Assembly: GCF_006345805.1 (NCBI RefSeq)
Contig: NC_043002.1
Coordinates: 55,490,001 to 55,554,000 of the forward strand
Length of the DNA stretch: 64,000 bases
Direction of reading: 5' to 3'
From: Octopus sinensis
Taxonomy: Eukaryota
The translations under genes were made by a program, and so were the position numbers. This document shows positions 14,096-58,380 of the stretch, one piece after another (the first letter of the stretch is position 1; every line of letters starts with the position of its first letter). Below the pieces are notes generated by a model, which did no database searches, had not been told where the DNA came from, and saw nothing but the letters and a program-made list of their open reading frames with translations.

Positions 14096-16110
14096 GCTAA
14101 GCATTTTGTCCAAAGTGCTTCTGATTCTGTCACCTTACCGGCTCCGTGTCTACATTCTGATAATTCTTGGGCATTCATCTAAGAAGAAGTGGGAGAGCTG
14201 AGAGAATCCTTGCTCTAACCAACATTTTACTAAAAGGTAGACGCTCCAGATTATTTATGCTTCAGAATATATCGGTGCACAAATATTAATGACCTCATAG
14301 TAATATACGGTATCTGGATGAAACTACATAGGCATTATAAGCGATTTGTAGGCACGTTATGCATAACGAAATAACACGGGCCTACACAATTCATTAATAT
14401 TTGCATTCCAGCCCCAGAAATGCGTTTAATATGTAAATTGGTATATACAAAAACTTAACACCAGTGTATGCTGGTGGTGATGATGATGGTGATGACGATG
14501 ACGGCGACATCGATGACAAAGCACAACGGGAACAAGAAGGATAAGCATGATGAAAAGGATATTTATGATGGGCTCCAGCGAAATATTTCCGTGCCTGACT
14601 CCAGTACGCATGCATTTGCGTGTCAATCGTATTCTTCCATATATATATATGCAGGAATCCCGCAACTATTGTGGGTTTTACGTTCTAAAACCCTACGCTA
14701 TAGGTGAAAATCTGCGTAGTAGAAACAATACCGTACTGTATACTATTTTTCTACTGATCTTATAATTTGTACATATTTATTTTATATACATGCAAAACAA
14801 ACATCACAGGGGATTCATCGTAAGCTTAATAATAACCCGATAGGCGGACCGCGATATGGCGAGAGAATACATCCACATTTCGAAGCACGAAGAGAAAGGA
14901 CCTGGTCCTCAAAAGCATCAACCTAAGGCTCTCAAGAGATACCTAACAAGGCTGAAAGTCACTCCTGATTTGTTTTCTTTATTTTTTTCTGCAAAAGCTT
15001 GTTGAGATAGCTGATGTGGAATATGATGTGGAATATGAAGGAGAGAAAATTACATCCACGTACAAAAAGGCCCCGTGATAAAATGAAAAAGCAAGCGATT
15101 TTTATGATGTACATGGTGTCTATGTAGGGGTGTGGATATACGGGTGCAGGCGTGGACATGGTCAGGGGATATATAATCACACATACACACACACACACAC
15201 TCAAACACACACTCACACATAGACATAGACATACACACACACATACACACACACACACAAACACAAACTCACACATACATACAATTCTCCTACTAATATG
15301 TGTATAATGAAAAAACGAGTAGCAGAACTAGAAAGAAATCGTTGAGAGTAGAAGTGAAAATGTCAAAATCCCGTTTCACCAAACCTTCAAAAAAAAAAGC
15401 AATAAAAAGAAAAGGTAAGCATGGAAGAGAAACGGAAAGTTTTTCAGTTTAGAGTCGTTTTCAGCTCTTAAGAAATATTTCGAGACCGAGGTAAAAAAAT
15501 AAATATTTTCTCTTTTGTTCATTATTGTTTTTTAAAGCAAAGTTAATTTTGGAGAACTTACTTTTATAAAATGCTCCTCAATTTTTCAAAAATATATTGG
15601 ATTGTCTTTTAAGTGAAGAATAATGTGTGTGTGTGTTCTCTCTTTCACCCAAGGAGATTCCGTTTAACCAATGTAGTATTTCTAAAGACTAGGCCAGATT
15701 ATGTAACATATGAGATTTCTTGTTTCACAATTAATATCCGACTTTATCTCTCGGATATTTCTAAGAGGTTGTAACTTGGCCTAATTCATATTCTGCAACA
15801 GCTATCTCTACAGGTTTTTACGGAAAATTCGGATAGGTGATGGATAAGTGAGTTTATCCTTTCTAAATATTTCTTGAGGATTTTTGGTTGACGCATGGTG
15901 TTGATGGTTGAACTTTTGAAGACCAAGTCCTTTACGTTTGTGCTTCAAAGAAAGGATTGAGAGAGTCTCATTGGTGAATGTCTATATATTTGCCATTCTT
16001 GAGTCATAACTGATGAGTTGTACCTGCAATTCAGAAGAGGTCAGCCTTATCACATTCTTTAAATTACTGAATCTCCTTCACAGTTACGTTTAATTTACAC
16101 GTGTCTGTGA

Positions 16111-17315: not shown

Positions 17316-17415
17316 NNNNNNNNNNNNNNNNNNNNNNNNNNNNNNNNNNNNNNNNNNNNNNNNNNNNNNNNNNNNNNNNNNNNNNNNNNNNNNNNNNNNN
17401 NNNNNNNNNNNNNNN
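17316..17415. other. Assembly gap (100 N)
   Basis: Run of N. Confidence 0.99.
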
Positions 17416-22062: not shown

Positions 22063-22108
<46 letters not shown>

Positions 22109-22308
22109 CATATAAATATAGGTATGTCTATATAAGATATATATAGATTGATACGTCACAGTCCCAATGGTGTAATACCAATAACATTGATGTAACGCGA
22201 TATTAAATAGAAATATTTATTTCATAAAGGAGAAATATATACATTGTTTACGATTATAAACGTGATAAGAAAATATAAGATCAAAACTGATGGAAATATT
22301 GGTATTTA

Positions 22309-22325
22309 ACGATTAATATAATCGT
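22309..22325 (-). promoter_or_regulatory. 3'UTR triloop hairpin (CDE-like), copy 2
   Basis: ACGATTA-TAT-TAATCGT on the transcribed strand. Confidence 0.5.
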
Positions 22326-22532
22326 CGATATGATTATTAAGTGGTGAAGCTAAAACACTTCTACATAATTGAAACGATACACTTGTATCTGATTTTTCTC
22401 TAACTGAGATTGGTTCCAGAAGTATTATAACGGGAATCAATTACATAAAGGATTCTAGAGTATTTTGAATGTGGTTTGAGAATTAATTACATAAAGGATT
22501 GTAGAGTATTTTGAATGTCGTTTGAGAATTAA

Positions 22533-24738
22533 TTACATAAAGGATTCTAGAGTATTTTGAATGTGGTTTATATTTTCATGAAGTGTATGAAGTGTAATTA
22601 TGGTAAACCATCGCTGCTTGGTTATTGGCACATCGTCCGGTAGCAAAAGACTGTCATCCACTTCGACATTTTGTTTGATGTTTGAAAATATCTGAAATAT
22701 ATGAAAAGAACATTTTAAATTAGGGATAAACATTAATAGATATTAATACACAGACACACACGAAGACTCACACACACACATGTAATGAAACCTAATAACA
22801 TGGAGGAATCTAAACATGGTCAATGTAGCTATTTCCCCCTACATTCAATACTATAGAGACATGTATACGCACATATTATATATCACATTTACTAATACTA
22901 ACAATATACACACACATTTTATATATGAATTTACTACTAATAATAAAATAGGCACATATGCACACACAATTATATTACGTATGGCATTTGGATAGACTAA
23001 GTTATATTATTAAATTAGAACGGTTCAAAATTATTCTAATTGTAGTAATTCTTTCAACTAATTAGACGTTCTACGCTGATTGCAATTCTACGCATTGTTG
23101 TCTACATCATATAAATGAGGAAAGTGTGCATAACGTCAGCTGATTATCGTCTGCACGTAGTATTTTACGACAGAAATCTTAGAAACCCTGAAGAGATGTA
23201 ATTTGTAATCTTTTGGTAATCATGAAACACAAGAATACTTTGAAAGAATGCTTCGAAATGAGTATATATTACTCCGAGGGAGTCTAAAGAATAGATCTTT
23301 GACAACAGTTTCTGTATATAAACTGACCATATCTTCCCGGATCAATTCTATGATATATATATTTAATATATTCCGATAAACATGAGGATATTTTGGTGCT
23401 GTTTTATTGACCAGGGAATTTATCTACATTAATTTTACGTGAGGAAATAAAAGAGAAATCGCGTGATTCTTCATCTAGGAAAATATATTACGATAATAAT
23501 ACTTACCGGTGAATCCAGGAAAAATATCGTATCAACCAGGTAAGAAAGTGTTTGTTTTAAGTAACAATAAAATATGGCATCAGATGTGGGAGTGAGTTTA
23601 GAACAGGCAGCGGGATAATAACACTCTGTCTGTATACGTTTGGCAGGGGCACACAGCTGGTCATATTCTTTTTCCGTCTGATTCTTCAACACAGTAACAT
23701 ATTGACTGAGGGTTGCAGACATATTGGATAGAGCAATCTGTAATAAAGAATTGTGAGAAGCTTGAATTTTATTCGACACTGATTGAGATTTCTTATAAAA
23801 TATAGAATCGAGTTTAGATAGAAGTGTATAAATATTTCAAGAAAATATGTTTGATAATATGTCCATACCTTGACTAAATCTGTCTGCGCGATGGTGATAT
23901 TGTCTTGAATGTTGAGCTGAGGGAATGTAAGTTCCGTCTGGTTGAGTAGCATATGAATAAAGTGAGGACAGCTTACTGCAGATGCCAATGGAATGTTGAG
24001 GCACTGAAAAAAAATGCGTGACATATTATGATTCTGAGGTTTGGACAGATAGGATTAGAAAGCAATGGAGTAGAATGAAGTCCGTTTACACTGAATATTG
24101 ATCATTACGAGAAATTTCTTAGTTATGATGTGGGGAGTATGCTAAGTAATATATTATTGGAGTGGTATAAGAAATAGTAATAATAATGATGATGATGATG
24201 ATGATGATCATAACAATATAAAAAATAACAATAATAATAAAAATAATATATGAACAAATACATGTAAACTTACAAAAGAGTGCAAAGTAGTGTTCACTGC
24301 TATTGAGGCCCTGCGAGCCGTATCCAGTTGAGCTTTTATGTGGGTCATTGGTATCGCTGTGGGTTTTATCGATGCTCCCTGGATGAATGAAGTCCAGACT
24401 GAGAGACATAGGACCAATATATATTGCCAGTCTACGGGAAAATGGAAAAAAATACCATTAAGGAACATTTGGAAAGAAAGGGACACATTGAAGAAATTGT
24501 TATTATTAAAAAGAAATAACTCGATAAGTCGCTGTTAGTTTATATACAGGTAACTTAACTGTTCGGTAAAAAGTTACCAACGTGGCTTTAGAAATAAATC
24601 CTCGGGTTGGTAAATTCGACCTAAACAGTTTTCAAGGTTGTGTCGCAGCATGGCCGTAAACTAGCGGACTAAAACAAGTAAAACACAGTAGATATATATA
24701 TATATATATATGTTAGTATGTATGTATGTATGTATATA

Positions 24739-29516: not shown

Positions 29517-31869
29517 AATGTAAGTGGCTTTAATATAAGTGGTTGTAAACGCACATATTATATATCACATTAACTAATACTAACAATATACACACACATC
29601 TTATATATGAATTTACTACTATTAATTATATAGACACATTAACACACAACACAAAAAATTGTGGTTTATATTTAGTGGAACTATGTTAAATATTTGTGAA
29701 TATCGTTTATTGAGTTCCAAAATGTTCAGCTCATTGTTTACTACACGTGAAAAACTAACAGCGACTTATCGAGTTATTTCATTTTAATAATAACAATTCC
29801 TTCAATGTCTCCCTTTTCTTCTAAATGTTCCTTAATGGTTATTTTTTTCTATTTTCCCGTAGACTGGCAATATATATTGGTCCTGTGTATCTCAGTCTGG
29901 ACTTCATTCATCCAGGGAGCATCGATAAAACCTACAGCGATACCAATAAATAACATAAAAGCACAACTGGATACGGCTCGCAGGGCCTCAATAGCTGTGA
30001 ACACTACTTTGCACTCTTTTGTAAGTTTACATATATTCATTCATATATTATTGTTATTATTATTGTTATACTTGATATTGTTATCATCATCATCATCATC
30101 ATCAACATCATCATCATCATCATCATCATCATCATTATTATTACAACTTCTTATACCACTCCAATGATATATTGCTTAACATACTACCCACATAATATTT
30201 AATAAAGTTCTCATAACGATCAATATTTGTAACTACTAGTTCAGTGTAAACGGACTTCTACTCCGTTATTTTCTAATCCTATCTGTCCAAATCTCATAAT
30301 ATGTTACGTGTTTTTCTACAGTGCCACAACACTCCATTGGCATCTGCGGTATCCTGTCCTCACTTTATTCATACGCTACTCAACCAGACGGAACTTACAT
30401 TCCCTCAGCTCTACATTCAAGACAATATCACCATCGCGCAGACAGATTTAGTCAAGGTATGGACATATTATCAAACATATTTTCTTGAAATATTTATATA
30501 CTTTCTATCTAAACTCGATTCTATATTTTATAAGAAATCTCAATCAGTGTTGAATAAAATTCAAACTTCTCGCAATTCTTTATTACAGATTGCTCTATCC
30601 AATATGTCTGCAACCCTCAGTCAATATGTTACTGTGTTGAAGAACCAGGCGGAAAAAGAATATGACCAGCTGTGTGCCCCTGCCAAACGTATACAGACAG
30701 AGTGTTATTATCCCGCTGCCTGTTCTAAACTCACTCCCACATCTGATGCCATATTTTATTGTTATTTAAAACAAACACTTTCTTACCTGGTTGATACGAT
30801 ACTTTTTCTGGAATCACCGGCAAGTATTATTATCGGAATATATTTTCCTAGATGAAGATTCACGCGATTTCTCTTTCATTTCCTTACGTAAAATTTATGT
30901 AGATAAATTCCCTGTTGAAGAAAACAGCACCAAAATATCCTCATGTTTATCGGAATATATTAAATATATAACTCATAGAATTGATCCGGGAAGATATGGT
31001 CAGTTTATTTACAGAAATTGTTGACAAAGATCAATGGTGCTATTCTTTAGATTCCCTCGGAGTAATATATAGTCATTTCGAAGCATTCTTTCAAAGTATT
31101 CTTGTGATTCATGACTACCAAAAGATTACAAATTACATCTCTTTAGGTTTTCTAAGATTTCTGTCGTAAAATACTTCGTGCAGACGATAATCAGCTTACG
31201 TTATGCACACTTTCCTCATTTATATGATGTAGACAACAATGCGTAGAATTGTAACCAGCGTAGAATGTCTAATTATTTGACGGAATTACTACAATTATAA
31301 TAATTTTGAACCGTTCTAATTTAATAATATAACTTACTCTATCAAAATGTTATACGTAATATATACGTGTGTTTGCATCTATGTCTATATTATTATTAAT
31401 AGTAAATTCATATATAAGATGTGTGTATATTTTTAGTATTAGTAAATGTGATATATAATGTGTGCGTATAAAAGTCGCTATAGTATTGAATTTAGGGGGA
31501 AATAGCTACATTGACCAGGTTCAGATCTCCTCCAAGTAGGGTTTCTTCTGGATAAATATATATATAAAGCTTTATAATGTGTGGACTGTGAGCTCCGTTA
31601 TTCGGTTTCATTACACGTGTGTGTGTGTGAGTGCGTCTTCGTGTGTGTCTGTGTATTAATATCAATTAATGTTAATCCCTAATTTACAATGTTCTTTTCA
31701 TATATTTCAGATATTTTCAAACATCAAACAAAATGTCGAAGTGGATGACAGTCTTTTGCTACCGGATGATGTGCCAATAACCAAGCAGCGATGGTTTACC
31801 ATAATTACACTCCATACACTTCATGAAAATATAAACCACATTCAAAATACTCTAGAATCCTTTATGTAA
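28328..31869 (+). CDS. Putative IL-6/G-CSF-like secreted cytokine, copy 3 (complete, 230 aa)
   Basis: E1 28328-28337, E2 29863-30020, E3 30322-30456, E4 30589-30819 (GC donor), E5 31711-31869. Protein: [56 protein letters not shown]|[45 protein letters not shown]|[77 protein letters not shown]|[52 protein letters not shown]. Confidence 0.8.
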
Positions 31870-31983
31870 TTAATTCCGTTATAATAATTCTGGAACCAAT
31901 CTCAGTTAGAGAAAAATCAGATACAAGTGTATCGTTTCAATTATGTAGAAGTGTTTTAGCTTCACCACTTAATAATCATATCG

Positions 31984-32000
31984 ACGATTATATTAATCGT
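31984..32000 (+). promoter_or_regulatory. 3'UTR triloop hairpin (CDE-like), copy 3
   Basis: ACGATTA-TAT-TAATCGT, ~115 nt after the stop. Confidence 0.5.
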
Positions 32001-33484
32001 TAAATACCAATATTTCCATAAATTTTTATCTTATATTTTCTTATCAGGTTTATAATCGTAAACAATATATATTTCTCCTTTTTGAACTAAATATTTCTAT
32101 TTAATATCGTGTTACATCGATGTTATTGGTATTACACCAATGGGACTATGACGTATCAATCTATATATATTTTTCATATATACATACCTATATTTATCTA
32201 TATATATCTTCATATATACATAACTATACCTACGTTATTTAATTCATTTTTTATTTTTTATTTTCCGATTCCATTTCCTATTTTTTTAATCTTCATTATA
32301 ATATATACACCATATTCCTATGCATTATACTAGGAAGACTTCCCTGCATACTCACACACACACACACACACACACATATACGCAGACATCATTTCTATTA
32401 TTTATTATATAAATGAGAATTATATTTTTGTATGGAAAAATTAAAGTGTTAATATTTTATTTTATATTCTGTTGTTTGTGTTTTTGATTTTGTTCAATGA
32501 GTGGATTACAACTTCGTTACAGTCATCCATATTATATTTACTACTTGTTCCATTATTTCTGATATGAATAGATGTGATTTATTTTATGAATAATTTCTTT
32601 TTATATTTCATGTTACTGTCATTTCTTTATCTTTATTATATATTTTATATACATTATATTACAATGTATTTCACCAGTAGGACATTTTTTTCTTCCCGTC
32701 TTCATAAAATAAGTACCATTTACGTAATGGGGTCGTCGAAATCCATTACACCTACCCCGAAATTGCTGGCCCATAGCCAAAGTTGGAAACTATCAATTCT
32801 TGTATCGAACCTGGGCCAGAGGGAATCGTTTCCTCTTTTGAATAAAACAACTGAGAGGAAAATACGAAGATGATACAAACCTAGAAACAGCTTTCTTCTC
32901 TTTTTCGTTCTTCCAATGTTATGACGAGATTATGTCCTACGGCCCTCACTAGAGAAAATGCAGCAGGAGAAAATATCCCGGGACTCGTGCATTCCTCATC
33001 GAAGCTCATCGAAATACCACAATATTTTTGTCAATATTAGATCAATAATGATCACTGTTATTGAATAATCTTTTAGGAGAATCTCATATTTTCTATAAGA
33101 AAATGTCTCCTTCAAGACATCAGAAAGTTAGTTGGAAAAGTCGTTCTTTTTCTGCTCAGTGGTGGCCATGGTTAGAGCGTAGTGCCTGTGAACCATAGCG
33201 TTCCAATCAAGCCGTGACATAATAGTCTTGATGCAATCAGAAATACGAGAGCTGCGTGTCTCGTTCTCATTTCTTGCTGTGGTGTTTCACTCAGTGCAGC
33301 CATGTCAGAGACGCACAGCTTTACTCGTATCTATGTATATTATTATTCAGTCTATTTCAAGATTTCTTGCCAATATAGAAAGAACAAGTTTCTAACCTAG
33401 CTACACACACAAACACACACACACACACTCACACACACACACACACACACACTCTTGTATGTTTGTATGTATGTATGTATATAT

Positions 33485-33732: not shown

Positions 33733-34158
33733 CAATGGCGAAAATTAATTTAAGACCGATGATAAAAGTTCTATTTCTTACAAAATATTTTGTTACTAAC
33801 ACCATACAAATCATTTTCATCTGTTACACCTTATGCAGAATGTATTTCTCTTTCGAATGATGCAGGCAATAACTATTTTTATACAACTTGAAGAATTCTA
33901 ATGCTAAATTCAGAGAATCGTTTCAAATTTACCGGCAAAATTAGTTTAAGACCACGTAATATGTATGCAAACTTTTTTGCCAAAATGGGTGGTCACACAA
34001 TTAGCCTAACTGGACGATATAGTGTTATAAATTAACGTTATTATACAATTGATTAATAAGGGGGGAAACAACGTCACCTCAGTCCAGTCACGAGAGCAAA
34101 AATCGTAGTACTTCACCAGCAAAAAGTTTCCTTTTCGAACACCAGCAAGCAACTAAAG
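33733..34158 (+). mobile_element. 5' terminal fragment of the long-TIR Tc1 (paralogous to 42950-43375)
   Basis: TA|CAATGGCGAAAA start. Reverse complement of 43375-~42950 with the same flank; ends at the junction with copy 4. Confidence 0.8.
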
Positions 34159-34296
34159 TTCAGCTCATTGTTTACTACACGTGAAAAACTAAGAGCGACT
34201 TATCGAGTTATTTCTTTTTAATAATAACAATTCCTTTAATGTCTCCCTGTCCTTCTAAATGTTCCTTAATGGTATTTTTTTTCTATTTTCCCGTAG

Positions 34297-34516
34297 ACTG
34301 GCAATATATATTGGTCCTATGTATCTCAGTTTGGACTTCATTCATCCATGGAGCATCGATAAAACCTACAGCGATACCAATAAATAACATAAAAACTCAG
34401 CTGGACGTGGCTCGCAGGGCCTCAATAGCCGTGAACACTACTTTGCATTCTTTTGTAAGTTTACATTTATTTCTTCATATATTATTTTTATTATTATTGT
34501 TATTCTTGATATTGTT

Positions 34517-34551
<35 letters not shown>

Positions 34552-34552
34552 T

Positions 34553-34614
<62 letters not shown>

Positions 34615-36269
34615 TATTACAACTTAAAACACTCCAATAATATATTACTTAAATTACTACCCACATAATAATTAATAAAGTTCTCATAAAGATCAATATT
34701 TATAAATATTCAGTGTAAACGGACTTCTACTCCGTTGTTTTCTAATCCTATCTGTCCAAATCTCAGACTCATAATATGTCACGTGTTTTTCTACAGTGCC
34801 ACAACACTCCAATGGCTTCTGCGGTATCCTGTCCTCACTTTATTCATATGCTACTCAACCAGACGGAACTTACATTCCCTCAGCTCTACATTCAACACAG
34901 TATCACCCTCGCGCAGACAGACTTAGTCAAGGTATGGACATATTATCAAACACCTTTTCTTGAAATATTTATACACTTTCTATCTAAACTCGATTCTATA
35001 TTTTATAAGAAATCTCAATCAGTGTCGAATCAAATTCAAGCTCCTCACAATTCTTTATTACAGATTGCTCTATCCAATATGTCTGCAACCCTCAGTCAAT
35101 ATGTTACTGTGTTGAAGAATCAGACGGAAAAAGAATATGACCAGCTGTGTGCCCCTGCCAAACGTATACAGACAGAGTGTTATTATCCGGCAGCCTGTTC
35201 TAAACTCACTCCCACATCTGATGCCATATTTTATTGTTACTTAAAACAAACACTTTCTTACCTGGTTGATACGATACTTTTTCTGGAATCACCAGTAAGT
35301 ATTATTCTCGTAATATATTTTCCTAGATGAAGATTCACGCGATTTCTCTTTTATTTCCTCACGAAAAATTAATGTAGATGAATAAACCGGTCAATTAAAC
35401 AGCACCAAAATATCCTCATGTTTATCGGAATATATTAAATATATATATCATAGAATTGATCCGGGAAGATATGGTCAGTTTATTTACAGAAACTGTTGTC
35501 AAAGATCAGAAGTGCTATTCTTTAGATTCCCTCGGAGTAATATATACTCATTTCGAAGCATTCTTTCAAAGTGTTTCATGACTACTAAAAGATTACAAAT
35601 TACATCTCTTCAGGGTTTCTAAGATTTCTGTCGTAAACTACTTCGTGCAGACGATAATCAGCTTACGTTCTGCACACTTTCCTCATTTTTATGATGTAGA
35701 CAACAATGCATAGAATTGTAATCTGCGTAGAATGTCTAATTATTTGACGGAATTACTACAATTAGAATAATTTTGAACCGTTCTAATTTAATAATATTAC
35801 TAACATGTGTGCGTATATTGTTAGTATCAGTAAATGTGATATATAATATGTGTGTATAAATGTCTCTATAGTATTGAATGTAGAGAGAAATAGCTACATT
35901 GACCATGTTTAGATCTCCTACACGTTGGGTTTCCTATGGATAAATAAATATGTATATATATATATATAGCTTTATAAGGTGTGGACTGTGAGCCCCAGTA
36001 ATTTCATTACATGTGTATGTGTGTGTGTGTGTGTGTGTTTGTATTTGTGTGTGTATTAATATCAATTATTGTGTATCTCTTATTTACAATGTTCTTTTCA
36101 TATATTTCAGATATTTTCAAACATCAAACAAAATGTCGAAGTGGATAACAGTCTTTTTCTACCGGACGATGTGCCAATAACCAAGCAGCGATGGTTTACC
36201 ATAATTACACTCCATACACTTCATGAAAATATAAACCACATTCAAAATACACTAGAATCCTTTATGTAA
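34297..36269 (+). CDS. Cytokine copy 4: exons 2-5 intact, no own exon 1 or promoter
   Basis: E2 34297-34454, E3 34797-34931, E4 35064-35294, E5 36111-36269, canonical GT-AG and in frame. Intron-1 sequence begins abruptly at ~34158, fused to the Tc1 fragment. Confidence 0.65.
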
Positions 36270-36384
36270 TTAATTCCTGTTATAATACTTCTGGAACCAA
36301 TCTCAGTTAGAGAAAAATCAGATACAAGTGTATCGTTTCAATTATGTAGAAGTGTTTTAGCTTCACCACTTAATAATCATATCG

Positions 36385-36401
36385 ACGATTATATTAATCG
36401 T
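36385..36401 (+). promoter_or_regulatory. 3'UTR triloop hairpin (CDE-like), copy 4
   Basis: ACGATTA-TAT-TAATCGT. Confidence 0.5.
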
Positions 36402-37308
36402 TAAATACCAATATTTCCATTAATTTTTATCTTATATTTTCTTATCACGTTTATAATCGTAAACTATATATTTCTCCTTTATAAGATAAATATTTCTATT
36501 TAATATCGTGTTACATCGATGTTGTTGGGATTAAACCAATGGAACTGTGACGGATCAATCTATATATATTTTTCATATATACATACCTATATTTATCTAT
36601 ATATATATATTCATATATACATAACTATACCTACGTTATTTAATTCATTTTTTATTTTTTATTTTCCGATTCCATTTCCTATTTTTTTAATATTCATTAT
36701 AATATATACATTATATTCCTATGCATTATACTAGGAAGACTTCCCTGCATACTCTCACACACACACACACATATACGCTAACATTATTTCTATTTTTTTT
36801 ATATAGGAATTATATTTTTGTATGGAATTACAGTGTTAATATTTATTTTATATTCAAGTTGTTTGTGTTTTTGGATTTTGTTCAATTAGTGGATTAAACT
36901 CGTTACAGACATCCATATCTTATTTCATTTTTTTATATATTTTAATGGATATGATAATAGTTTTATGTATTTTATAGTTTATTGATAGATATAACCATCA
37001 TGTATATCTGATTTCGATTACCATTAATATTCATATTTATTACTATTATGAAATTCCTGATGATTATAATACTGATTTAGAAATGAATAAGGTGATACTA
37101 TAATTTTATTATAACATAGCGGTTTTATTTTATAGATTATAATCGAATTTTTAGTTAAATTTGTATAATCCATGCTCAGTATATGTAATCCAAGGGGGTT
37201 TACTGTATAATATTTGTATAGATAGAGATTTCAACATTATTTAGTTATATTATCCCATATTTATAACTAGATTTCTTGATATGAAAAGATGTGATTATTT
37301 GTAAATAA

Positions 37309-37701
37309 CTAGCAGTATCGCCCGCCGTTCCTCGGGTTTGTAAGGGAAATAACTATATAAGCATTTTTAGAGATGTAAAGTATAATAGCCATCTCAATAT
37401 GGCTAACCACAAAGGGGGTGTTACTGTAGCTTTTTAAGTTCTGAGATTTATTAATACATTTTTAGAGAGTTACTTCCCATATATAATAGCAAAAAGATGC
37501 ATTAAAAAGGGGGGAAAATGATGGTAATTTTTTTAAAAATCGTAGACTCATCGTAGACGCGCGCTAATAACCAGAATGTCTTGATACGTAGCACGACTAT
37601 AAGATACCCGCTTTTGGTTACACTGCACCGCAAAATGTGGGAGTAGTTAGGAATCTAAATCGTGGGAGACAGACACACAACTTGACTTTTATATATAAAG
37701 A
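37309..37701 (-). mobile_element. Short non-autonomous Helitron (393 bp), different family
   Basis: Minus strand A|TCTTTATATATAAAAGTCAAGTTGTGTGTCTGTC...CCCGAGGAACGGCGGGCGATACTGCTAG|T; no TSD. The empty site ATAA|TTTCTTTTTAT is at ~32593. Confidence 0.8.
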
Positions 37702-38717
37702 TTTCTTTTTATACTTCATGTTACAGTCATTTCTTTCACTTCAATATATATTTTATATATATTATATTACAATGTATCTCACCAGTAGGACATTTTTTTC
37801 TTCCCGTCATTATAAAATTAGTTCCATTTACGTAATGGGGTCGACGAAATCCATTACACCTACCCCGAAATTGCTGACCTGGAGCTAAAGTTGGAAACTA
37901 TCAATTCTTGCATCGAACCTGTACCAGAGGGAATCTTTTCCTCTTTTGAATAGAACAACTGAGAGGAAAATACGAAGATGATGCACACTCAGAAACACCT
38001 TGCTTCTCTTTTTCGTTCTTCCAATGTTATGACGAGATTATGTCCTACGGCCCTCACTGGAGAAAATACAGCAGGAGAAAATATCCCGGGACTCGTGCAT
38101 TCCTCATCGAAGCTCATCGAAATACCACAATATTTTTGTTGATATTACATCAATAATGATCACTGTTATATCGCCACACTTGTATTGAGTAATCTTCTAG
38201 AAGAATCTCATATTTCCTATAAGAAAATGTCTCCTTCAAACATCAGAAATTTAGTTGGAAAAGTCGTTCTTTTCTGCTCAGAGGTGGCCATGTTTAGAGC
38301 GTAGTACCTGTCAAACATAGCGTGTTCCAATCAAGCCGTGACATAATAGTCATGATGCGATCAGAAATACGAGAGCTGCGTATCTCGTTCTCATATGTTG
38401 CAGAAACAAGCGTGTCCAGCATCTTAAGTGTCCAGCTTTCCATTCGTCTAACTGTGGTGATTCACTGGGTGCAGCCATGTCAGAGTCGCACAGCTTTACT
38501 CGCAGCTGTGTATGTATGTATGTTGTTATTCAGTCTATTTCAAGATTTCTTGCCAATAGAGAAAGAACAGATCTAACCTAGATCTATGTATGTATGTACG
38601 TATGTATGTATGTATGTATGTATGTATGTATGTATGTATGTATGTATGTATGTACGTATGTATGTATGTATGTATGTATGGATGGATGTATCGATGGATG
38701 GATGTATGTATGTGTGT

Positions 38718-43690: not shown

Positions 43691-45346
43691 CCAGAAGATT
43701 ATCATTTAAATATATACGTGCATATCAAGATATGCAACTATCTGCATGAGAATACATACATAAAACATACAAATCTGCACATATCTATATACATACATAC
43801 AGGCATGCATACATGCATACAGACATACATACAAAATTACCCTCTTTTTTAAGTTGAAATTCCAACTTAGGAACCTTAGATCTAGGTAAGATCTGTTCTT
43901 TCTCTATTGGCAAGGAATCTTGAAATAGACTGAATAACAACATACATACATACACAGCTGCGAGTAAAGCTGTGCGACTCTGACATGGCTGCACTCAGTG
44001 AATCATCACAGTAAGACGAATGGAAAGCTGGACACTTAAGATTCTGGACACGCTTGTTTCTGCAAGAAATGAGAACGAGACACGCAGCTCTCGTATTTCT
44101 GATCGCATCATGACTATTATGTCATATCCTGATTGGAACACGCTATGTTTGACAGGTACTACGCTCTAAACATGGCCACCTCTGAGCAGAAAAAGGACGA
44201 CTTTTCCAACTAACTTTCCGATGTATAAAGGAGACATTTTCTTATAGAAAATATGAGATTCTTCTAAAAGATTAGTCAATACAAGTGTGGCGATATAACA
44301 GTGACCATTATTGATGTAATATCGACAAAAATATTGTGGTATTTCGATGAGCTTCGATGAGGAATGCACGAGTCCCGGGATATTTTCGCCTGCTGCATTT
44401 TCTCCAGTGAGGGCCGTAGGACATAATCTCGTCATAACATTGGAAGAACGAAAAAGAGAAGAAAGACTTTTCTAGGTTTGCATCATCTTCGTATTTTCCT
44501 CTCAGTTGTTTCATTCAAAAGAGGAAACGATTCCTTCTGGCACAGGTTCGATGCAAGAATTGATAGTTTCCAACTTTGACTCAAGGCCAGCAATTTCAGG
44601 GTAGGTGTAATGGATTTCGTCGACTCCATTACGTAAATGGTACTAATTTTATGATGACGGGAAGAAAAAAATGTCCTACTGGTGAGATACATTGTAATAT
44701 AATATATATAAAATATATATTGAAGATAAAGAAATAACTGTAACGTGAAATATAAAAAGAAATTATTTATAAAATAAATCACATCTTTTCATATCATGAA
44801 ATAATGGAACAAGTAGTAAATATAATATGGATGTCCGTAACGATGTTGTAATCCACTCATTGAACAAAATCAAAAACACAAACAACTGAATATAAAATAA
44901 AATATTAACACTTTAATGTTTCCATAGAAAAATATAATTCTCATTTATATAATAAATAATAGAAATGATGTTGGCGTATATGTGTGTGTGTGTGAGTGTG
45001 CAGGGAAGCCTTCCTAGTATAATGCATAGGAATATGGTGTATATATTATAATGAAGATTAAAAAAATAGGAAATGTAATCGGAAAATAAAAAAATTTAAA
45101 ATAAATTAATTAAGGTAGGTATAGGTATGTTTATATGAATATATATAGATAAATATAGGTACGTATATAGGAAAAATATATAGAGATTGATACGTCACAG
45201 TCCCATTGGTGTAATACCAATAACATCGATGTAACACGATATTAAATAGAAATATTTATTTCATAAAGGAGAAATATATATTGTTTACAATTATAAACGT
45301 GATAAGAAAAATATAAGGTAAATATTTATGGAAATATTGGTATTTA

Positions 45347-45363
45347 ACGATTAATATAATCGT
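45347..45363 (-). promoter_or_regulatory. 3'UTR triloop hairpin (CDE-like), copy 5
   Basis: ACGATTA-TAT-TAATCGT on the transcribed strand. Confidence 0.5.
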
Positions 45364-45507
45364 CGATATGATTATTAAGTGGTGAAGCTAAAACACTTCT
45401 ACATAATTAAAACGATACACTTGTATCTAATTTTTCTCTAACTGAGATTGGTTCCAGAAATATTATAAGAGGAATTATGGTTCCAGAAATATTATAACAT
45501 GGATTAA

Positions 45508-48383
<2,876 letters not shown>

Positions 48384-48685: not shown

Positions 48686-49322
48686 GAGGAAAGCTTTTAT
48701 GAATGAACTATTTTTATCACAGTATATAGGTCACAGTCCAATTGCTAGTAGGTTACTTTCGCTTAACGGGAATGGCCCGAGCGGGGAATAGTGCGTTACA
48801 GTTACATGTTATAAATCGTTGGTACTATCGCCGTCGCCAACGTCGTCGTCGTCATTATCATTGTCATCATCATGTGTATCAGCTCAGTCATCTTCACCAC
48901 CACCACCACCACCACCACCACTACAACCACTACCACCACCATCACCACCATCACCACCACCAGAACGAGATAAAGAAACCCATAACTCAAATATCGTATA
49001 ACTCCCTCAATGACAACTCACATACATTCAGAAATCAAGGGTCTAATATCCCCAAAAACGAATACATAAACTATTGAAAATAATTTACAACCAACAATAC
49101 AAACAGTCACAAATGGAAAAATGTGTTTAGAAGGAGGGGATGGAGAAGGAGGAAGGGGTACGAAGCAGAAGAAACAGCATCAATATATGGCAAGAACAGA
49201 AACCTACGGCTAGATCATAGAAATCCTTAGATCTACATACATACAAACATACATACATACATACATAAATACATAAACACATAAATACATACTTTCATAC
49301 GTATATAAATACATGCATAGGA

Positions 49323-49361
<39 letters not shown>

Positions 49362-51542
49362 AGTGTAAGATCCAGGGATGGAGATTTAGTAAGACAGCTT
49401 CAAGCAATTCTACGGTAGGTGACTAAGTTTGGCGAATTTGCAAAAAGAATACAAAATGTAGAAGGAAAATCCGGGATACATGTGTTTCATGGCGAGGGAA
49501 ATTTCAGAAGTGGTAAAATCCAAGTGAGGTGTATACTGCCACCTAATCATCAGGCCAAGGATATCTTCATTAGATTAAATGTTATAATTGTCTTGGATTG
49601 TCTCTGAAGCAAAGACAAACAGGAAAGAAAATTAAACTTCTTAACGCAAATTAGCTAATTTTCACAACGTAGGATTTCTCTTTGCTCGGGAAAATGTGTG
49701 TGTATGTGGCCCCGTTCTTGCTCTCATGCAATACCTAACAAAGGTGAAATTCATTTGAAAACACATCTGGATTTGTTTCTGCAAATGCTTGTGGAGATAG
49801 CTGATATGGAATATGAAGGAGAGAAAATAACAACCACATACAAACAGGCCCCGTAATAAAATGAAAAAGAAGCGATTCTTTAAGATATACATGGCGTTTG
49901 TGTGCAGGCGTGTACATGGATCGGTGATATATAAATACATACATACACACACAAACACACATACACACACAATTCCCATACTAATATGTAGAATTAATAA
50001 ACGAGTAGCAAAACTAGAAACAATTCATTGAGAGATAGAAGTGAAAATGTCAAAATTCCGTTTCACCTAATTTTCAATAAAATAATATGAAGAAGAGAAT
50101 GTAATAAAAAAAAATATGGAAGTGAGGCGGAAAATTTTTCATTTTATTGTCGTTTTCATCTCTCCTTAAGACGTTTTTAGCGACGGAGGTAAAAAAAATA
50201 TTGTCTTTTGTTCAGTATTGTCTTTTAAAGCAAAGTTAATTTTGGAGAATTTATTTTTAAAAAATACTTCTCAATTTTTAAAAAATATTTTGGATTGTCT
50301 GTTAAGCAAAGACAAACAGGAAAAAAATAAACTTGTCATCGAAACTTAGTTAATTTTCACTAAGTGGGATTTCCCTTTGGTCGGGATAAAGTGTGTGTAT
50401 TTTCTCTCTATCACCCAAGGAGATTCCGGTTTAACCAATATAGTTTTCCTTACGACTAGGCCAGATTATGTAAAACAAGAGATTTCTTGTTTCCCAATTA
50501 ATATCCGTCTTTATCCCTCGGATATTTCTAAATGGTTGTAACTTTGCCTAATTCAGATTCCGCGTCAGCTATCTCAACAAGTTTTTACAGAAAATTCGGG
50601 GTTGGGGTGGGTAAGTGAATTTATCCTAGATATTTCTTGAGGGTTTTTGATTGACGCATGGTGTTGATGGTTGGGCTTTTGAAGACCAAGTCCTTTACGT
50701 TCGTGTTTCGAAGACAGGATTGAGAGAGTCACATTGGTGTATGTCTCTATGTTTGCCATTCCTGAGTCATAACTGGTGAGCTGTACCTGTAATTCAGAAT
50801 GTGTCAGCCTTATCACATTCTTTATCATACTGAATCTCCTTCAGAATTACGTTAAGTGTACACGTGTCTGTGGTGTACTGAGCCGCTTGCACGTTAATTT
50901 CATGAAAACTCTGTTCGTTTCATCATATCATCTGGAACACACGTCGTCATAACCGACGGAGAACCAGGTCGCTTGCAACAAGGATTTCTATTATCTAGTC
51001 GAAGATATCTGTACTTGCCATATTTTTATATTGATGCTGTTTCTTCTGTTTCGTACCCCCTTCCTCCTCTTCTTTCTCCTCCCCCTTCCCCTCCTTCTAA
51101 ACACATTCCTCCATTTGTGACTGTCGATATTGTTGGTTGTAAATTATTTTCAATAGTTTCTGTATTCGTTTTTTGGGATATTAGACCCTTGATTTCTGAA
51201 TGTATGTGAGTTTGTGATTGAGGGAGTTATACGATGTTTGAGTGAATGGTTTCTTTATTTCGTTCTGGTATTCGTGATGGTGAGGATGGGTATGGTGGCG
51301 GTAGTGGTGGTGTTCGTGGTGGTCGTGGTCTTGAAGATGATGAAGTTGATACACATGATGATGATAATGATAATGACGAGGAAGACGTTGTCGACGGCGA
51401 TAGTAACAACGATTTGTAACCTGAAACTGTAACTCACTATTTCCCGCGCGGTTACATCCCGTTAAGCGAAAGTAACCTACTAGCAATTGGACTGTGACCT
51501 ATATACTATGATAAAAATAGTTCATTCATAAAAGCTTTCCTC

Positions 51543-51742
51543 TTTCCGTAAACCTAAATCTCTGACACATTGAAAGAAAAATATTAGCACAAGCTTCAAC
51601 TTCCGCCAGAAATGAAAGCGAGCAATTTTCGTAAACTAAATTTAAACAACAGATAAAGGAAGATGATATCTTCCAGCTTCATGAAGGCCATCACATAGAA
51701 CGGGATTTTCCAATCCTATCACTGCTAAAACCACTATATAAA
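51543..51742 (+). promoter_or_regulatory. Promoter of copy 6
   Basis: TTTCCGTAA 51543-51551, GGGATTTTCC 51702-51711, TATATAAA 51735-51742. Confidence 0.65.
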
Positions 51743-51844
51743 CCGATATTCCATCGTCACTTAAAAACAATAATTCGTAACAAGCAAAGGAACTACAACT
51801 TGACGTTCTCTTAAAACATTTTTCATAACGAAAAATCAAACAGA

Positions 51845-55431
<3,587 letters not shown>

Positions 55432-55546
55432 TTAATTCCCGTTATAATACTTCTGGAACCAATCTCAGTTAGAGAAAAATCAGATACAAGTGTATCGTTT
55501 CAATTATGTAGAAGTGTTTTAGCTTCACCACTTAATAATCATATCG

Positions 55547-55563
55547 ACGATTATATTAATCGT
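55547..55563 (+). promoter_or_regulatory. 3'UTR triloop hairpin (CDE-like), copy 6
   Basis: ACGATTA-TAT-TAATCGT. Confidence 0.5.
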
Positions 55564-55918
55564 TAAATACCAATATTTCCATAAATTTTTTTCTTATATT
55601 TTCTTATCACGTTTATAATCGTCAACAATATATATTTCTCCTTTATGAAATAAATATTTCTATTTAATATCGTGTTACATCGATGTTATTGGTATTAAAA
55701 CAATGGAACTGTGACGGATCAATCTATATATATTTTTCATATATACATAGCTATATTTATATATATATATATATTCATATATACATAACTATACCTACGT
55801 TATTTAATTCATTTTTAATTTTTTTATTTTCCGATTCCATTTCCTATTTTTTTAATCTTCGTTATAATATATACACCATATTCCTATGCATTATACTAGG
55901 AAGACTTCCCTGCATACT

Positions 55919-55949
<31 letters not shown>

Positions 55950-56136
55950 GCCAACATCATTTCTATTATTTATTATATAATTGAGAATTATATTTTTGTA
56001 TGGAAACATTAAAGTGTTAATATTTTATTTTATATTCTGTTGTTTGTGTTTTTGATTTTGTTCAATGACTGGATTACAACTTCGTTACAGACATCCATAT
56101 TATATTTACTGCTTGTTCCATTATTTCTTGATATGA

Positions 56137-56809
56137 GCCAGCAATTTCGGGGGTGGTGTAATGGATTTCGACGACCCCATTACGGAAATGGTACTTATTT
56201 TATGATGACAGGAAGACTGAATATCCTACAGGTGAGATACATTGTAATATAATGTATATAAAATATATATTAAAGATAAAGAAATGACTGTAACATAAAA
56301 TATAAAAAGAAATTATAAAATAAATCACAACAATAGTGTGACTGTATTCAGAATGGGCAAAGCCCATCACGTCGGGCTTTACAACATGATCATCTTTGGA
56401 GCCATTTCACAAATATTTCTTGAAGACAAACAATTGTTACATGTCAGAGAATATCTGCTCTGTAAACTTCGGATGTTGCTCTCCACGCGTTGTCAAGAGA
56501 GCGAGAGGAAATAAACAACTTTATCGATACGACGATTCCATACAAATTTCGCTCTTTAGACTTCTATAGCTCATCTTAGCGAATTCATCCTAGAAATATA
56601 TGTGTACAACTATTGTTGTGATTTATTTTATAATTTCATTTTATATTTAATGTTACAGTCATTTCTTTATCTTTAATATATATTTTATATACATTATATT
56701 ACAATGTATCTCACCTGTAGGATACTCAGTCTTCCTGTCATCATAAAATAAGTACCATTTACGTAATGGGGTCGTCGAAATCCATTACACCTCCCCCGAA
56801 ATTGCTGGC
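56137..56809. repeat. 200-bp inverted duplication enclosing a 273-bp foreign segment
   Basis: 56137-56336 is the reverse complement of 56610-56809. The spacer matches the block at ~12370-12640. Confidence 0.8.
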
Positions 56810-57347
56810 CCATATCCAAAGTTGGAAACTATCAATTCTTGCATCCAACTTGTGCCAGAGGGAATCGTTTTGTCTTTTGAATAAAGCAACTGAGAGGAAA
56901 ATACAAAGATGATGCAAACCTAGAAAAGCCTTTCTTCTCTTGTTTGTTCTTCCAATGTTATGACGAGATTATGTCCTACGGCCCTCACTAGAGAAAATGC
57001 AGCAGGAGAAAATATCCCGGGACTCGAGCATTTTTACTCGAAGCTCATAGAAATACCACAAAATTTTTGTCAATATTAGATCAATTATGATCATTGTTAT
57101 ATCGCCACACTTGCATTGAATAATCTTTTAGAAGAATCTTATATTTTCTATAAGAAAATGTCTCCTTCAATACATCGGATAGTTAGCTGGAAAAGTTGTC
57201 CTTTATTTGCTCAGAGGTGGCCATGGTTAGAGAGTAGTGCCTGTCAAACATAGCGTGTCAAACATAGCATTTCTTGCCAATAGAGAAAAGAACAGGTTTC
57301 TAACCTAGATGTATGTATGTATGTATGTGTGTGTGTGTGTGTGTGTT

Positions 57348-57386
<39 letters not shown>

Positions 57387-57631
57387 TGTGGTGTGTGTGT
57401 GTTGTGTGTGTGTGTGTGTTGTGTATGAATAACTGATTAGAAATACGAGGGAGTTTGAGAGAACGTGCTGTGATATGTAAGTGTGGGAATTTGATGTCGA
57501 ATATATGATGTCGAATATACAATGAATACTTCTAGATAATGAATAGCATGATATCATAAACATTGATGTGGAACATTGCCGGATAATGAACATTGTACGA
57601 TACTAAACAGAGTATCGTACAATCACAATCA

Positions 57632-58380
57632 CATTCTATGTGATGGCCTTCATGAAGCTGGAAGAAATCATCTTCCTTTATCTATAGTTTCAATTTAGTT
57701 TGCGAAAATTGCTCGCTTTCAATTCTGGCGGAAGTTGAAGCTTGTGCTAATATTTTACCTTCAATGTGTCAGGAGATTTAGGTTTACGGGAAGAGGAAAG
57801 CTTTTATGAATGAACTATTTTTATCACAGTATATAGGTCACAGTCCAATTGCTAGTAGGTTACTTTCGCTTAACGGGAAAGAACTGAGCGGGGAATAGTG
57901 AGTTACAGTTTCATGTTACAAATCGTTGTTACTATCGCCGTCGCCAAAGTCGTCGTCATTATCATTGTAACCATCATATATATCATCTCCATCATCATCT
58001 TCACTACAACCAACACCATCACAACCGCCGCAACTACCAACACCACCACCACCACCACCACCACCAGAACGAAATAAAGAAACCAATCATTCAAACATCG
58101 TATAACTCCCTCCATCACAACTCACATACGTTCAGAAATCAAGTGTCTAATATCCCAAAGAACGAATACAGAAACTATTGAAATTAATTTACAACCAACA
58201 ATACCGACAGTCACAAATGGAGAAAGGTACTTAGGCGGAGGAGGAGGAGGAGGAGGAGGAGGAAGGGGAGGAGGTTGTGGTGGTGGTGGAGGAGAAAAAG
58301 GAGGAAGAGGTAGAAGAGGAGGGAGGGGAGGCGAAACAGAAGAAACAGCATCAATATAAGAATATGGCACGGACAGAAAC
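57632..58380 (-). promoter_or_regulatory. Orphan distal promoter half (duplicated at ~60755-61500)
   Basis: Keeps TTCCCGTAA (57792-57784) and the C/EBP-like site but breaks just before the kB site. No TATA, exon 1 or gene follows. Confidence 0.5.

What the first reader, a model, noticed from the sequence alone, without database searches (positions are those of the whole stretch)
31984..32000. Invariant 3'UTR stem-loop resembling a Roquin/Regnase-1 constitutive decay element
Seen: ACGATTA-TAT-TAATCGT (7-bp stem, extendable by G-U, UAU triloop) lies ~115 nt after the stop and upstream of the AATAAA seen in copies 2, 5 and 6. It is identical in all five visible 3'UTRs (22309, 31984, 36385, 45347, 55547), while flanks carry substitutions. 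Established: Roquin and Regnase-1 recognise short stems with a Py-Pu-Py triloop in cytokine mRNAs such as TNF and IL-6. Inference: post-transcriptional cytokine control shared with vertebrates.
Basis: partly seen in the sequence, partly recalled or inferred. Interest (0 to 1): 0.72.

Follow-up and report, generated by a model that had tools for sequence, protein, structure and literature searches.

The report
CDE-like hairpin in octopus cytokine-like 3'UTR
A small RNA hairpin that fits the vertebrate rules for a Roquin decay signal really does follow each copy of an octopus cytokine-like gene, but its sameness between copies only reflects a generally conserved 100-base stretch, and nothing shows that the hairpin itself is under selection.

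Summary
The 17-nt hairpin ACGAUUA-UAU-UAAUCGU is present, identical and in gene sense in all five visible 3'UTRs of a six-copy gene array (Octopus sinensis chr CM016864.1). The gene is a cephalopod-only secreted protein. Its predicted fold matches G-CSF/LIF/IL-6-type helical cytokines, so "cytokine-like" has support. The hairpin fits the relaxed Roquin CDE consensus (6-8 bp, YRU loop, A-U closing pair as in UCP3/CSF3) and folds with about 0.83 probability.

The "invariance" argument fails:
- The hairpin sits in an 81-nt fully invariant run, and 34% of 17-nt windows in the last exon plus UTR are equally invariant.
- Across 16 O. sinensis and O. vulgaris copies it is the most variable part of a ~100-nt constrained island (31919-32019).
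- Its three changes all break the stem or the loop, none is compensated, and the affected genes keep intact coding exons.
- In O. bimaculoides the stem grows to 10 bp.
- In Argonauta the hairpin is absent, while the neighbouring block 31919-31964 is kept.
- Four other subfamily 3'UTRs lack any such hairpin.

Verdict: a real, plausible but unproven CDE-type candidate. The better-supported feature is the conserved island just upstream of it.

The parts
31984..32000 (+). Flagged hairpin, copy C: ACGAUUA-UAU-UAAUCGU (SL3, CDE-like)
36385..36401 (+). Same hairpin, copy D
55547..55563 (+). Same hairpin, copy F (RefSeq LOC118763924)
22309..22325 (-). Same hairpin, copy B (about 208 nt after the stop because of a 2 x 47-nt tandem duplication at the stop)
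45347..45363 (-). Same hairpin, copy E (about 145 nt after the stop)
31919..32019 (+). About 100-nt low-substitution island of the 3'UTR (copy C coordinates). It shows 0.10 changes/site, against 0.19 in the last-exon CDS and 0.73 in the intron
31919..31964 (+). Deeply conserved block, 87% identical to the Argonauta hians 3'UTR. It is the only non-coding match between the two genes
31920..31933 (+). SL1: GAUAC-AAGU-GUAUC, identical in Argonauta. It lies within a 24-nt tract that is deleted in two O. vulgaris copies
31948..31963 (+). SL2: GAAGU-GUUUUA-GCUUC. The hexaloop is ADE-like, on a 5-bp stem with a U.G closing pair. In Argonauta it is GAAGC-GUUUUCU-GCUUC
31711..31869 (+). Last coding exon of copy C (stop TAA at 31867-31869)
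32086..32091 (+). Likely poly(A) signal position. Copy C has ACTAAA; AATAAA is at 55649-55654 (F), 22216-22221 (B, minus strand) and 45255-45260 (E, minus strand); copy D has GATAAA at 36485-36490
29805..31869 (+). Copy C coding exons 29805-30020, 30322-30456, 30589-30819 and 31711-31869. RefSeq models add a short upstream exon encoding MNNY

Best explanation
The hairpin is a real, thermodynamically plausible stem-loop in the proximal 3'UTR of a tandemly amplified, cephalopod-specific gene for a secreted protein with a helical-cytokine-like fold.

Its identity across the five copies follows from its position. It lies inside a ~100-nt island (31919-32019) that evolves 5-10 times more slowly than nearby intron and downstream DNA. 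There is no sign of selection on the hairpin itself.

Shown: the island is constrained, and its 5' half (two small hairpins, SL1 and SL2) is retained in Argonauta.

Inferred: the island is a cis-regulatory 3'UTR module read by RNA-binding proteins or small RNAs that set mRNA stability or translation.

Inferred: the flagged hairpin is a younger addition, seen only in the genus Octopus. By vertebrate rules it would be a competent Roquin site, but it is dispensable, because several otherwise intact paralogues have lost it.
For: - Island: Fitch changes per site over 16 copies are 0.087 (31919-31964), 0.05 (31965-31983), 0.18 (hairpin) and 0.105 (32001-32019). The comparison values are 0.19 (last-exon CDS), 0.73 (intron) and 0.6-1.0 (downstream).
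- Orthologous O. sinensis/O. vulgaris pairs cluster together, so the paralogues predate that species split.
- Argonauta keeps 31919-31964 at 87% identity, while the encoded proteins are about 40% identical and the last-exon CDS no longer aligns at the DNA level.
- No ORF of 30 aa or more crosses the island, and there is no Rfam match.
- Hairpin not specially constrained: 34% of 17-nt windows are equally invariant.
- Three of 11 O. vulgaris copies carry U14>A, A12>U or loop A9>U. The first drops dG to -1.3, the second opens the triloop, and the third removes the loop purine.
- Covariation is zero.
- Those three copies have intact coding exons.
Against: - The hairpin still changes about four times more slowly than the intron, so some constraint on these bases, structural or not, cannot be excluded.
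- It meets the best-binding class of the Roquin CDE consensus and sits 20 nt from an ADE-like GUUUUA hairpin, a pairing expected in only 0.025% of shuffled UTRs.
- Local gene conversion could mimic constraint within the genus.
- No transcript data were available to confirm that the island lies in the mature mRNA.
Confidence: 0.5

Rival explanations
1. The hairpin is a functional constitutive-decay element. Octopus Roquin (ROQ domain), possibly with a Regnase-1 homologue, binds the UAU triloop hairpin, perhaps together with the upstream GUUUUA hairpin as in the Ox40 ADE-CDE tandem. It then recruits deadenylation or cleavage to keep these cytokine-like mRNAs short-lived.
For: - The hairpin fits the relaxed CDE consensus: 7 WC bp, a YRU loop and an A-U closing pair as in UCP3/CSF3 (PMC6294493; PMC11609897).
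- Folding probability is about 0.83 in the 246-nt UTR.
- Chance of an equally good motif is 0.8% per UTR, and 0.025% together with an ADE-like hairpin.
- GUUUUA is the high-affinity HOMEZ ADE loop.
- The host protein is predicted to fold like G-CSF, LIF and IL-6, and the G-CSF mRNA carries a YAU/A-U CDE.
- Stem-loop recognition by Roquin and its cooperation with Regnase exist in a protostome, C. elegans RLE-1/REGE-1 (PMC9371910).
Against: - There is no hairpin-specific conservation and no covariation.
- The hairpin is broken without compensation in 3 of 11 O. vulgaris paralogues that keep intact ORFs.
- It has a 10-bp stem in O. bimaculoides, and 9 bp was reported non-functional for the TNF CDE.
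- It is absent from Argonauta and from four other subfamily UTRs.
- SL2 fails the stem criterion of at least 6 bp and has a wobble closing pair.
- The relaxed consensus is permissive: about 2600 human genes match and only about 1 in 8 is conserved.
- The hairpin fails the strict TNF-type consensus.
Confidence: 0.2
2. No function at all. The hairpin is a chance AT-rich inverted repeat. Its identity, and that of the whole island, reflects young duplicates plus local gene conversion of the last exon.
For: - One such hairpin per 64 kb is expected by chance.
- All copies descend from a single origin.
- The last exon and proximal UTR are homogenised as a block.
- A second unrelated YRY-triloop hairpin family also exists in the window.
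Against: - Paralogues predate the O. sinensis/O. vulgaris split and differ by about 10% in introns, yet by about 1% in the island.
- The island's 5' half is retained in Argonauta, which gene conversion cannot explain.
Confidence: 0.2
3. A DNA-level element. The near-palindrome CGATTA-TAT-TAATCG acts as a protein-binding site, such as a dimeric transcription-factor or insulator site, or as a recombination hotspot, rather than as RNA.
For: - The arms are a perfect inverted repeat.
- The element lies in a segmentally duplicated, partly inverted array.
Against: - It always has the same orientation relative to the gene and lies within the transcribed last exon's conserved tail.
- It does not coincide with any duplication breakpoint: homology among the copies continues past it on both sides.
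- No binding-site family was tested or matched here.
Confidence: 0.05

Closest known systems
Roquin constitutive decay elements of the UCP3 / CSF3 (G-CSF) type
   Same: A 6-8 bp Watson-Crick stem, a UAU (YAU) triloop, an A-U (R-Y) closing pair, an AU-rich stem, a 3'UTR location and a cytokine-type host gene (PMC6294493; PMC11609897).
   Different: No evidence of Roquin binding or decay. The hairpin is not conserved beyond the genus, has a 10-bp stem in O. bimaculoides, and is a single element rather than the tandem CDEs of UCP3.
TNF CDE (strict Leppek-type consensus)
   Same: A triloop hairpin with a Py-Pu-Py loop in a cytokine 3'UTR.
   Different: It lacks the three Y-R pairs and 3' purine stack of the upper stem, and it has an A-U rather than a C-G closing pair.
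[quoted passage not shown]
   Same: A hexaloop hairpin with a GUUUUA loop lies 20 nt upstream of a triloop hairpin.
   Different: The octopus hexaloop stem is only 5 bp with a U.G closing pair. The Argonauta counterpart has a 7-nt loop (GUUUUCU).
C. elegans ets-4 3'UTR ADE-type stem-loop bound by RLE-1/Roquin with REGE-1/Regnase
   Same: An invertebrate 3'UTR stem-loop module, which shows that the trans-factors and this mode of recognition exist outside vertebrates (PMC9371910).
   Different: That element is experimentally validated and conserved among nematodes. The octopus one is neither.

Membership tests
Roquin CDE (relaxed consensus, Braun et al. 2018) | Trinucleotide loop YRN, preferably YRU | tested here: met
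   The loop is UAU in all 5 window copies. One O. vulgaris copy has UUU.
Roquin CDE (relaxed consensus, Braun et al. 2018) | 6-8 bp stem of Watson-Crick pairs | tested here: met
   7 WC pairs plus a basal G.U in O. sinensis and O. vulgaris. In O. bimaculoides the stem is 10 bp, outside the range.
Roquin CDE (relaxed consensus, Braun et al. 2018) | Appreciable folding probability in the UTR context (>5%) | tested here: met
   Pair probabilities are 0.65-0.85 in the 246-nt UTR.
Roquin CDE (relaxed consensus, Braun et al. 2018) | Conserved across species, either identical or with structure-preserving changes | tested here: not met
   The hairpin is identical in O. bimaculoides but absent from the Argonauta relative. 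Three of 11 O. vulgaris paralogues carry disruptive, uncompensated changes, and there is no covariation.
Roquin CDE (relaxed consensus, Braun et al. 2018) | Located in the 3'UTR of the mature mRNA | tested here: inconclusive
   It lies 115 nt after the stop and 85 nt before the AATAAA/ACTAAA position. No transcript contigs were on record.
Roquin CDE (relaxed consensus, Braun et al. 2018) | Bound by the ROQ domain, with Roquin-dependent mRNA decay | not testable with these tools
   This needs EMSA/ITC and reporter half-life assays. The presence of an octopus Roquin was not checked here. Published work reports a single rc3h1 in invertebrates (PMC11172303).
TNF-type CDE (strict consensus) | Three Y-R pairs in the upper stem forming a 3' purine stack, with a C-G closing pair | tested here: not met
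   The upper stem is A-U, U-A, U-A, and the 3' arm is UAAUCGU.
Roquin ADE (for neighbouring SL2) | GUUYUA hexaloop | tested here: met
   The loop is GUUUUA at 31953-31958. In Argonauta it is GUUUUCU.
Roquin ADE (for neighbouring SL2) | Stem of at least 6 bp | tested here: not met
   The stem is 5 bp including a U.G closing pair, and pairing probability is 0.01 in the full UTR fold.
Regnase-1 target stem-loop | Py-Pu-Py loop stem-loop cleaved by Regnase-1 in translating mRNA | not testable with these tools
   Only the loop motif could be checked (met). Cleavage requires experiment.
Long-chain class-I helical cytokines (host protein) | Four-helix bundle fold | tested here: met
   The AF2 model has pLDDT 83.4 and pTM 0.79. 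Top PDB matches are G-CSF, LIF, prolactin, IL-27p28, CNTF, IL-11 and IL-6, with TM up to 0.79 when normalised to the target. Helix connectivity was not checked separately.
Long-chain class-I helical cytokines (host protein) | Sequence-family membership (e.g. the Pfam IL6/G-CSF family) | tested here: not met
   There is no Pfam hit above threshold. All homologues are cephalopod 'uncharacterized' proteins. Foldseek E-values are 0.014 or higher.

The most novel reading that the evidence does not exclude
The conserved 3'UTR island is a Roquin/Regnase recognition module, with an ADE-like GUUUUA hairpin and a UAU-triloop CDE. It would control a cephalopod-specific family of G-CSF/IL-6-fold cytokines. 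Stem-loop-mediated decay of helical-cytokine mRNAs would then be either ancestral to Bilateria or convergently re-invented in a lophotrochozoan.
Probability: 0.15. Interest if true: 0.75.

Novelty: new member of a known kind. Interest (0 to 1): 0.4.

Why it matters
If the hairpin, or the island, were shown to recruit octopus Roquin, the Roquin/Regnase decay logic for cytokine mRNAs would extend to Lophotrochozoa. It would also give a first regulatory handle on an uncharacterised cephalopod family of helical-cytokine-like genes.

As it stands, the practical result is a correction. Identity among young paralogues is not evidence of selection. The element worth testing first is the 100-nt island, especially 31919-31964, and not the 17-mer alone.

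Tried and rejected
- Rfam scan of 31700-32300 at E up to 10 gave only noise.
- Transcript evidence was not obtainable. No Logan or ENA contigs carry these proteins, the P0003 lookup was empty, and gene ranges are CDS-only, so the poly(A) site could not be verified.
- A second Argonauta paralogue (L008) turned out to be a degraded copy with no recognisable last exon or UTR.
- The first AF2 run on 6 sequences was poor (pLDDT 52). It was replaced by a 15-sequence alignment.
- The ADE-like reading of SL2 was considered and kept only as a lead. It fails the 6-bp stem rule, and similar relaxed hits are expected 1.2 times per 64 kb.
- ARAGORN found no tRNA gene in the tRNA-like insertion in the Argonauta UTR.
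- Literature searches for octopus plus Roquin, or for helical cytokines in octopus, returned nothing relevant.
- An octopus Roquin orthologue was not searched for. That would have required a query sequence recalled from memory, and an expensive search unlikely to list the octopus protein.

Full report
**Where we are.** The window is Octopus sinensis assembly GCA_006345805.1, chromosome CM016864.1, about 55,490,001-55,554,000. Locus L003 is 100% identical to window 48845-58431. The window holds six paralogous copies of one gene in mixed orientation:

| Copy | Strand | Window coordinates |
|---|---|---|
| A | - | 343-2911 (3' end off the window) |
| B | - | 22100-24541 |
| C | + | 29639-33200 |
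| D | + | 34155-38322 |
| E | - | 44141-47871 |
| F | + | 52497-57255 |

All copies keep open reading frames over the exons visible in the window (for copy A, the last exon lies off the window). In copy C the exons are 29805-30020, 30322-30456, 30589-30819 and 31711-31869. RefSeq models add a short upstream exon.

**The observation.**
- The 17-mer ACGATTATATTAATCGT occurs exactly five times, always in the sense of its gene.
- It folds as a 7-bp Watson-Crick stem, plus one basal G.U, with a UAU loop. dG is -3.9 / -6.0 kcal/mol.
- In the 246-nt UTR its pairs have probabilities of 0.65-0.85. The UTR as a whole is not unusually structured (z = -1.2).
- It starts 115 nt after the stop in copies C, D and F. 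In B it starts at about nt 208 and in E at about nt 145, because the stop region is tandemly duplicated there.
- About 85 nt downstream lies AATAAA (B, E, F), ACTAAA (C) or GATAAA (D), followed by a GU-rich tract.

So the description is right. The stated contrast with the flanks is not:
- The hairpin lies in an 81-nt run (31939-32019) that is invariant in all five copies.
- 34% of all 17-nt windows in the last exon plus UTR are just as invariant.

**Chance.**
- Dinucleotide shuffles of the window give 1.8 +/- 1.2 hairpins with at least 7 WC pairs and a YRY triloop per 64 kb, both strands.
- Apart from TA microsatellites, the real window has two such families: this one and ATTTTCT-TAT-AGAAAAT.
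- For one 246-nt UTR of this composition, the relaxed CDE consensus appears in 5.4% of shuffles. A motif as good as this one appears in 0.8%.

**More copies and more species.** I fetched 11 further copies from O. vulgaris (L004, L005), one from O. bimaculoides (L001/L006) and the closest Argonauta hians gene (L002).

Eight O. vulgaris copies have the exact hairpin. Three differ:

| Change | Effect |
|---|---|
| U14>A | A.A mismatch; dG falls to -1.3 kcal/mol |
| A12>U | the triloop opens to a 7-nt loop |
| loop A9>U | UUU loop, no longer Py-Pu-Py |

- None of these changes is compensated. A formal pair count shows zero covariation: 6 of 8 pairs never vary and 2 depart only by broken pairs.
- The three variant genes have intact coding exons.
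- In O. bimaculoides the 17-mer is identical. A downstream A>G extends the helix to 10 bp (-9.8 kcal/mol), outside the 6-8 bp range reported for active CDEs.

**What is really conserved.** Parsimony changes per site on a tree of the 16 O. sinensis and O. vulgaris copies:

| Region | Changes per site |
|---|---|
| Intron (last 60 nt) | 0.73 |
| Last-exon CDS | 0.19 |
| UTR 31870-31918 | 0.45 |
| 31919-31964 | 0.087 |
| 31965-31983 | 0.05 |
| Hairpin 31984-32000 | 0.18 |
| 32001-32019 | 0.105 |
| 32020-32100 | 0.35 |
| Further downstream | 0.6-1.0 |

- There is therefore a ~100-nt constrained island (31919-32019). The hairpin lies inside it but is its most variable part.
- Orthologous O. sinensis/O. 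vulgaris pairs cluster together, so the paralogues are older than that species split.
- Between Octopus and Argonauta the proteins are about 40% identical. Argonauta P0008 scores best against this array's subfamily.
- Only two DNA segments still align between the two genes: coding exon 3 (75% over 220 nt) and UTR block 31919-31964 (87% over 47 nt, E = 2e-9).
- That block holds two small hairpins. SL1 is GAUAC-AAGU-GUAUC and is identical in Argonauta. SL2 is GAAGU-GUUUUA-GCUUC, and in Argonauta it is GAAGC-GUUUUCU-GCUUC, a one-sided U.G to C-G change.
- The flagged hairpin has no counterpart in Argonauta, even allowing 3 mismatches.
- No ORF of 30 aa or more crosses the island, and there is no Rfam match.

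**The host gene.**
- There is no Pfam domain.
- Homologues are only 'uncharacterized' proteins of Octopus, Argonauta and a cuttlefish.
- With a 15-sequence alignment, AlphaFold2 gives a confident model (pLDDT 83.4, pTM 0.79) with four long helices.
- Its best PDB matches are almost exclusively long-chain helical cytokines: G-CSF (TM 0.76-0.79 normalised to the target), LIF, prolactin, IL-27p28, CLCF1, CNTF, IL-11 and IL-6. E-values are weak, at 0.014 or higher.

**Comparison with the known elements.**
- Published work defines active CDEs as 6-8 bp stems without G.U, capped by YRN (best YRU).
- UAU with an A-U closing pair is the UCP3/CSF3 type. About 2600 human genes match this consensus, and only about one in eight matches is conserved (PMC6294493; PMC11609897).
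- The octopus hairpin meets the relaxed consensus. It fails the strict TNF-type rule of three Y-R pairs with a purine stack.
- SL2 carries the high-affinity ADE loop GUUUUA. However, its stem is only 5 bp with a wobble closing pair, and its pairing probability in the full UTR is 0.01.
- A CDE-like and an ADE-like hairpin together occur in 0.025% of shuffled UTRs. I relaxed the ADE stem criterion after seeing SL2, so this figure is suggestive only.
- Stem-loop recognition by Roquin works in a protostome: C. elegans RLE-1 with REGE-1 (PMC9371910).
- Four other subfamily genes have no CDE- or ADE-like hairpin in their proximal 3'UTRs and no similarity to the island. They are LOC115213514, LOC115212847 and LOC118763732 in O. 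sinensis, and LOC106873702 in O. bimaculoides.

**Verdict.**
- The sequence observation stands, but the inference from invariance does not.
- The most likely account (about 0.5) has three parts. The hairpin is a passenger, or a young dispensable addition, in a constrained 3'UTR island. The island's old core is 31919-31964. The island acts as a cis-regulatory module for mRNA stability or translation.
- A functional Roquin/Regnase CDE remains possible (about 0.2). So does no function at all, with gene conversion explaining the similarity within the genus (about 0.2). A DNA-level role is unlikely (about 0.05).
- Transcript ends and protein binding could not be tested with these tools.

Noticed in passing
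window 343-57255 (six gene copies); model from P0004 = copy F: The array encodes a cephalopod-restricted secreted protein of about 230 aa. Its AlphaFold2 model (pLDDT 83, pTM 0.79) matches G-CSF, LIF, IL-6 and prolactin-type long-chain helical cytokines. It has no Pfam family, and no paper on it was found in the library.
   Followed up: partly
window 31919-31964 (also 36320-36365, 55482-55527 and the minus-strand copies); L002 15627-15673: This 46-nt 3'UTR block is 87% identical between Octopus and Argonauta, although the proteins are only about 40% identical. It contains two small hairpins, one with the ADE-type loop GUUUUA.
   Followed up: partly
L005 copies whose last exons start at 3145(-) and 11408(+): Two O. 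vulgaris paralogues have a clean 24-nt deletion that removes AATCAGATACAAGTGTATCGTTTC, which includes SL1 of the conserved block.
   Followed up: no
window about 22400-22535 (copy B, minus strand) and about 45470-45510 (copy E); L004 49603-50194: The 47-nt segment spanning the stop codon is present three times in tandem in copy B and in its O. vulgaris orthologue. A shorter duplication of about 30 nt is present in copy E. These lengthen the UTR upstream of the island.
   Followed up: no
window 30457-30588 (intron 2 of copy C) and its equivalents: This 132-nt intron is in frame, free of stops and highly conserved among copies. Some O. vulgaris gene models (P0002, P0006) translate through it. 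A retained-intron isoform is possible.
   Followed up: no
window 29835-29850 (copy C) and its equivalents: A 1-nt length difference in a T-run changes which ATG is in frame in this exon (copies C and D versus A, B, E and F). RefSeq avoids the issue by splicing from an upstream MNNY exon into CCCGTAG|ACTGG.
   Followed up: partly
window 30820 (copy C): Copy C has a GC (GCAAGT) splice donor at intron 3, where the other copies have GTAAGT.
   Followed up: no
window 33088-33104(-), 44236-44252(+), 57143-57159(-), 60267-60283(-): A second YRY-triloop hairpin family, AUUUUCU-UAU-AGAAAAU. Its 5' arm is pyrimidine-rich and its 3' arm purine-rich, like the TNF CDE. At the two sites checked against a gene copy (33088, copy C; 44236, copy E) it lies about 1.2 kb downstream of the stop, on the strand antisense to that copy.
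   Followed up: no
L002 about 15700-15850: A tRNA-like or SINE-like insertion, flanked by a direct repeat (TTATTTATGTTTAAAGTT), interrupts the Argonauta 3'UTR just after the conserved block. ARAGORN calls no tRNA there.
   Followed up: partly
window 17316-17415 and 59906-60005; 56882-57181 versus 60006-60305: There are two 100-N assembly gaps. The second abuts a 100%-identical 3.1-kb direct repeat, which may be an assembly artefact.
   Followed up: no
window about 1700-2450 (copy A intron 1): Copy A carries an insertion of about 0.6 kb flanked by long trinucleotide microsatellites in intron 1. The other copies lack it.
   Followed up: no
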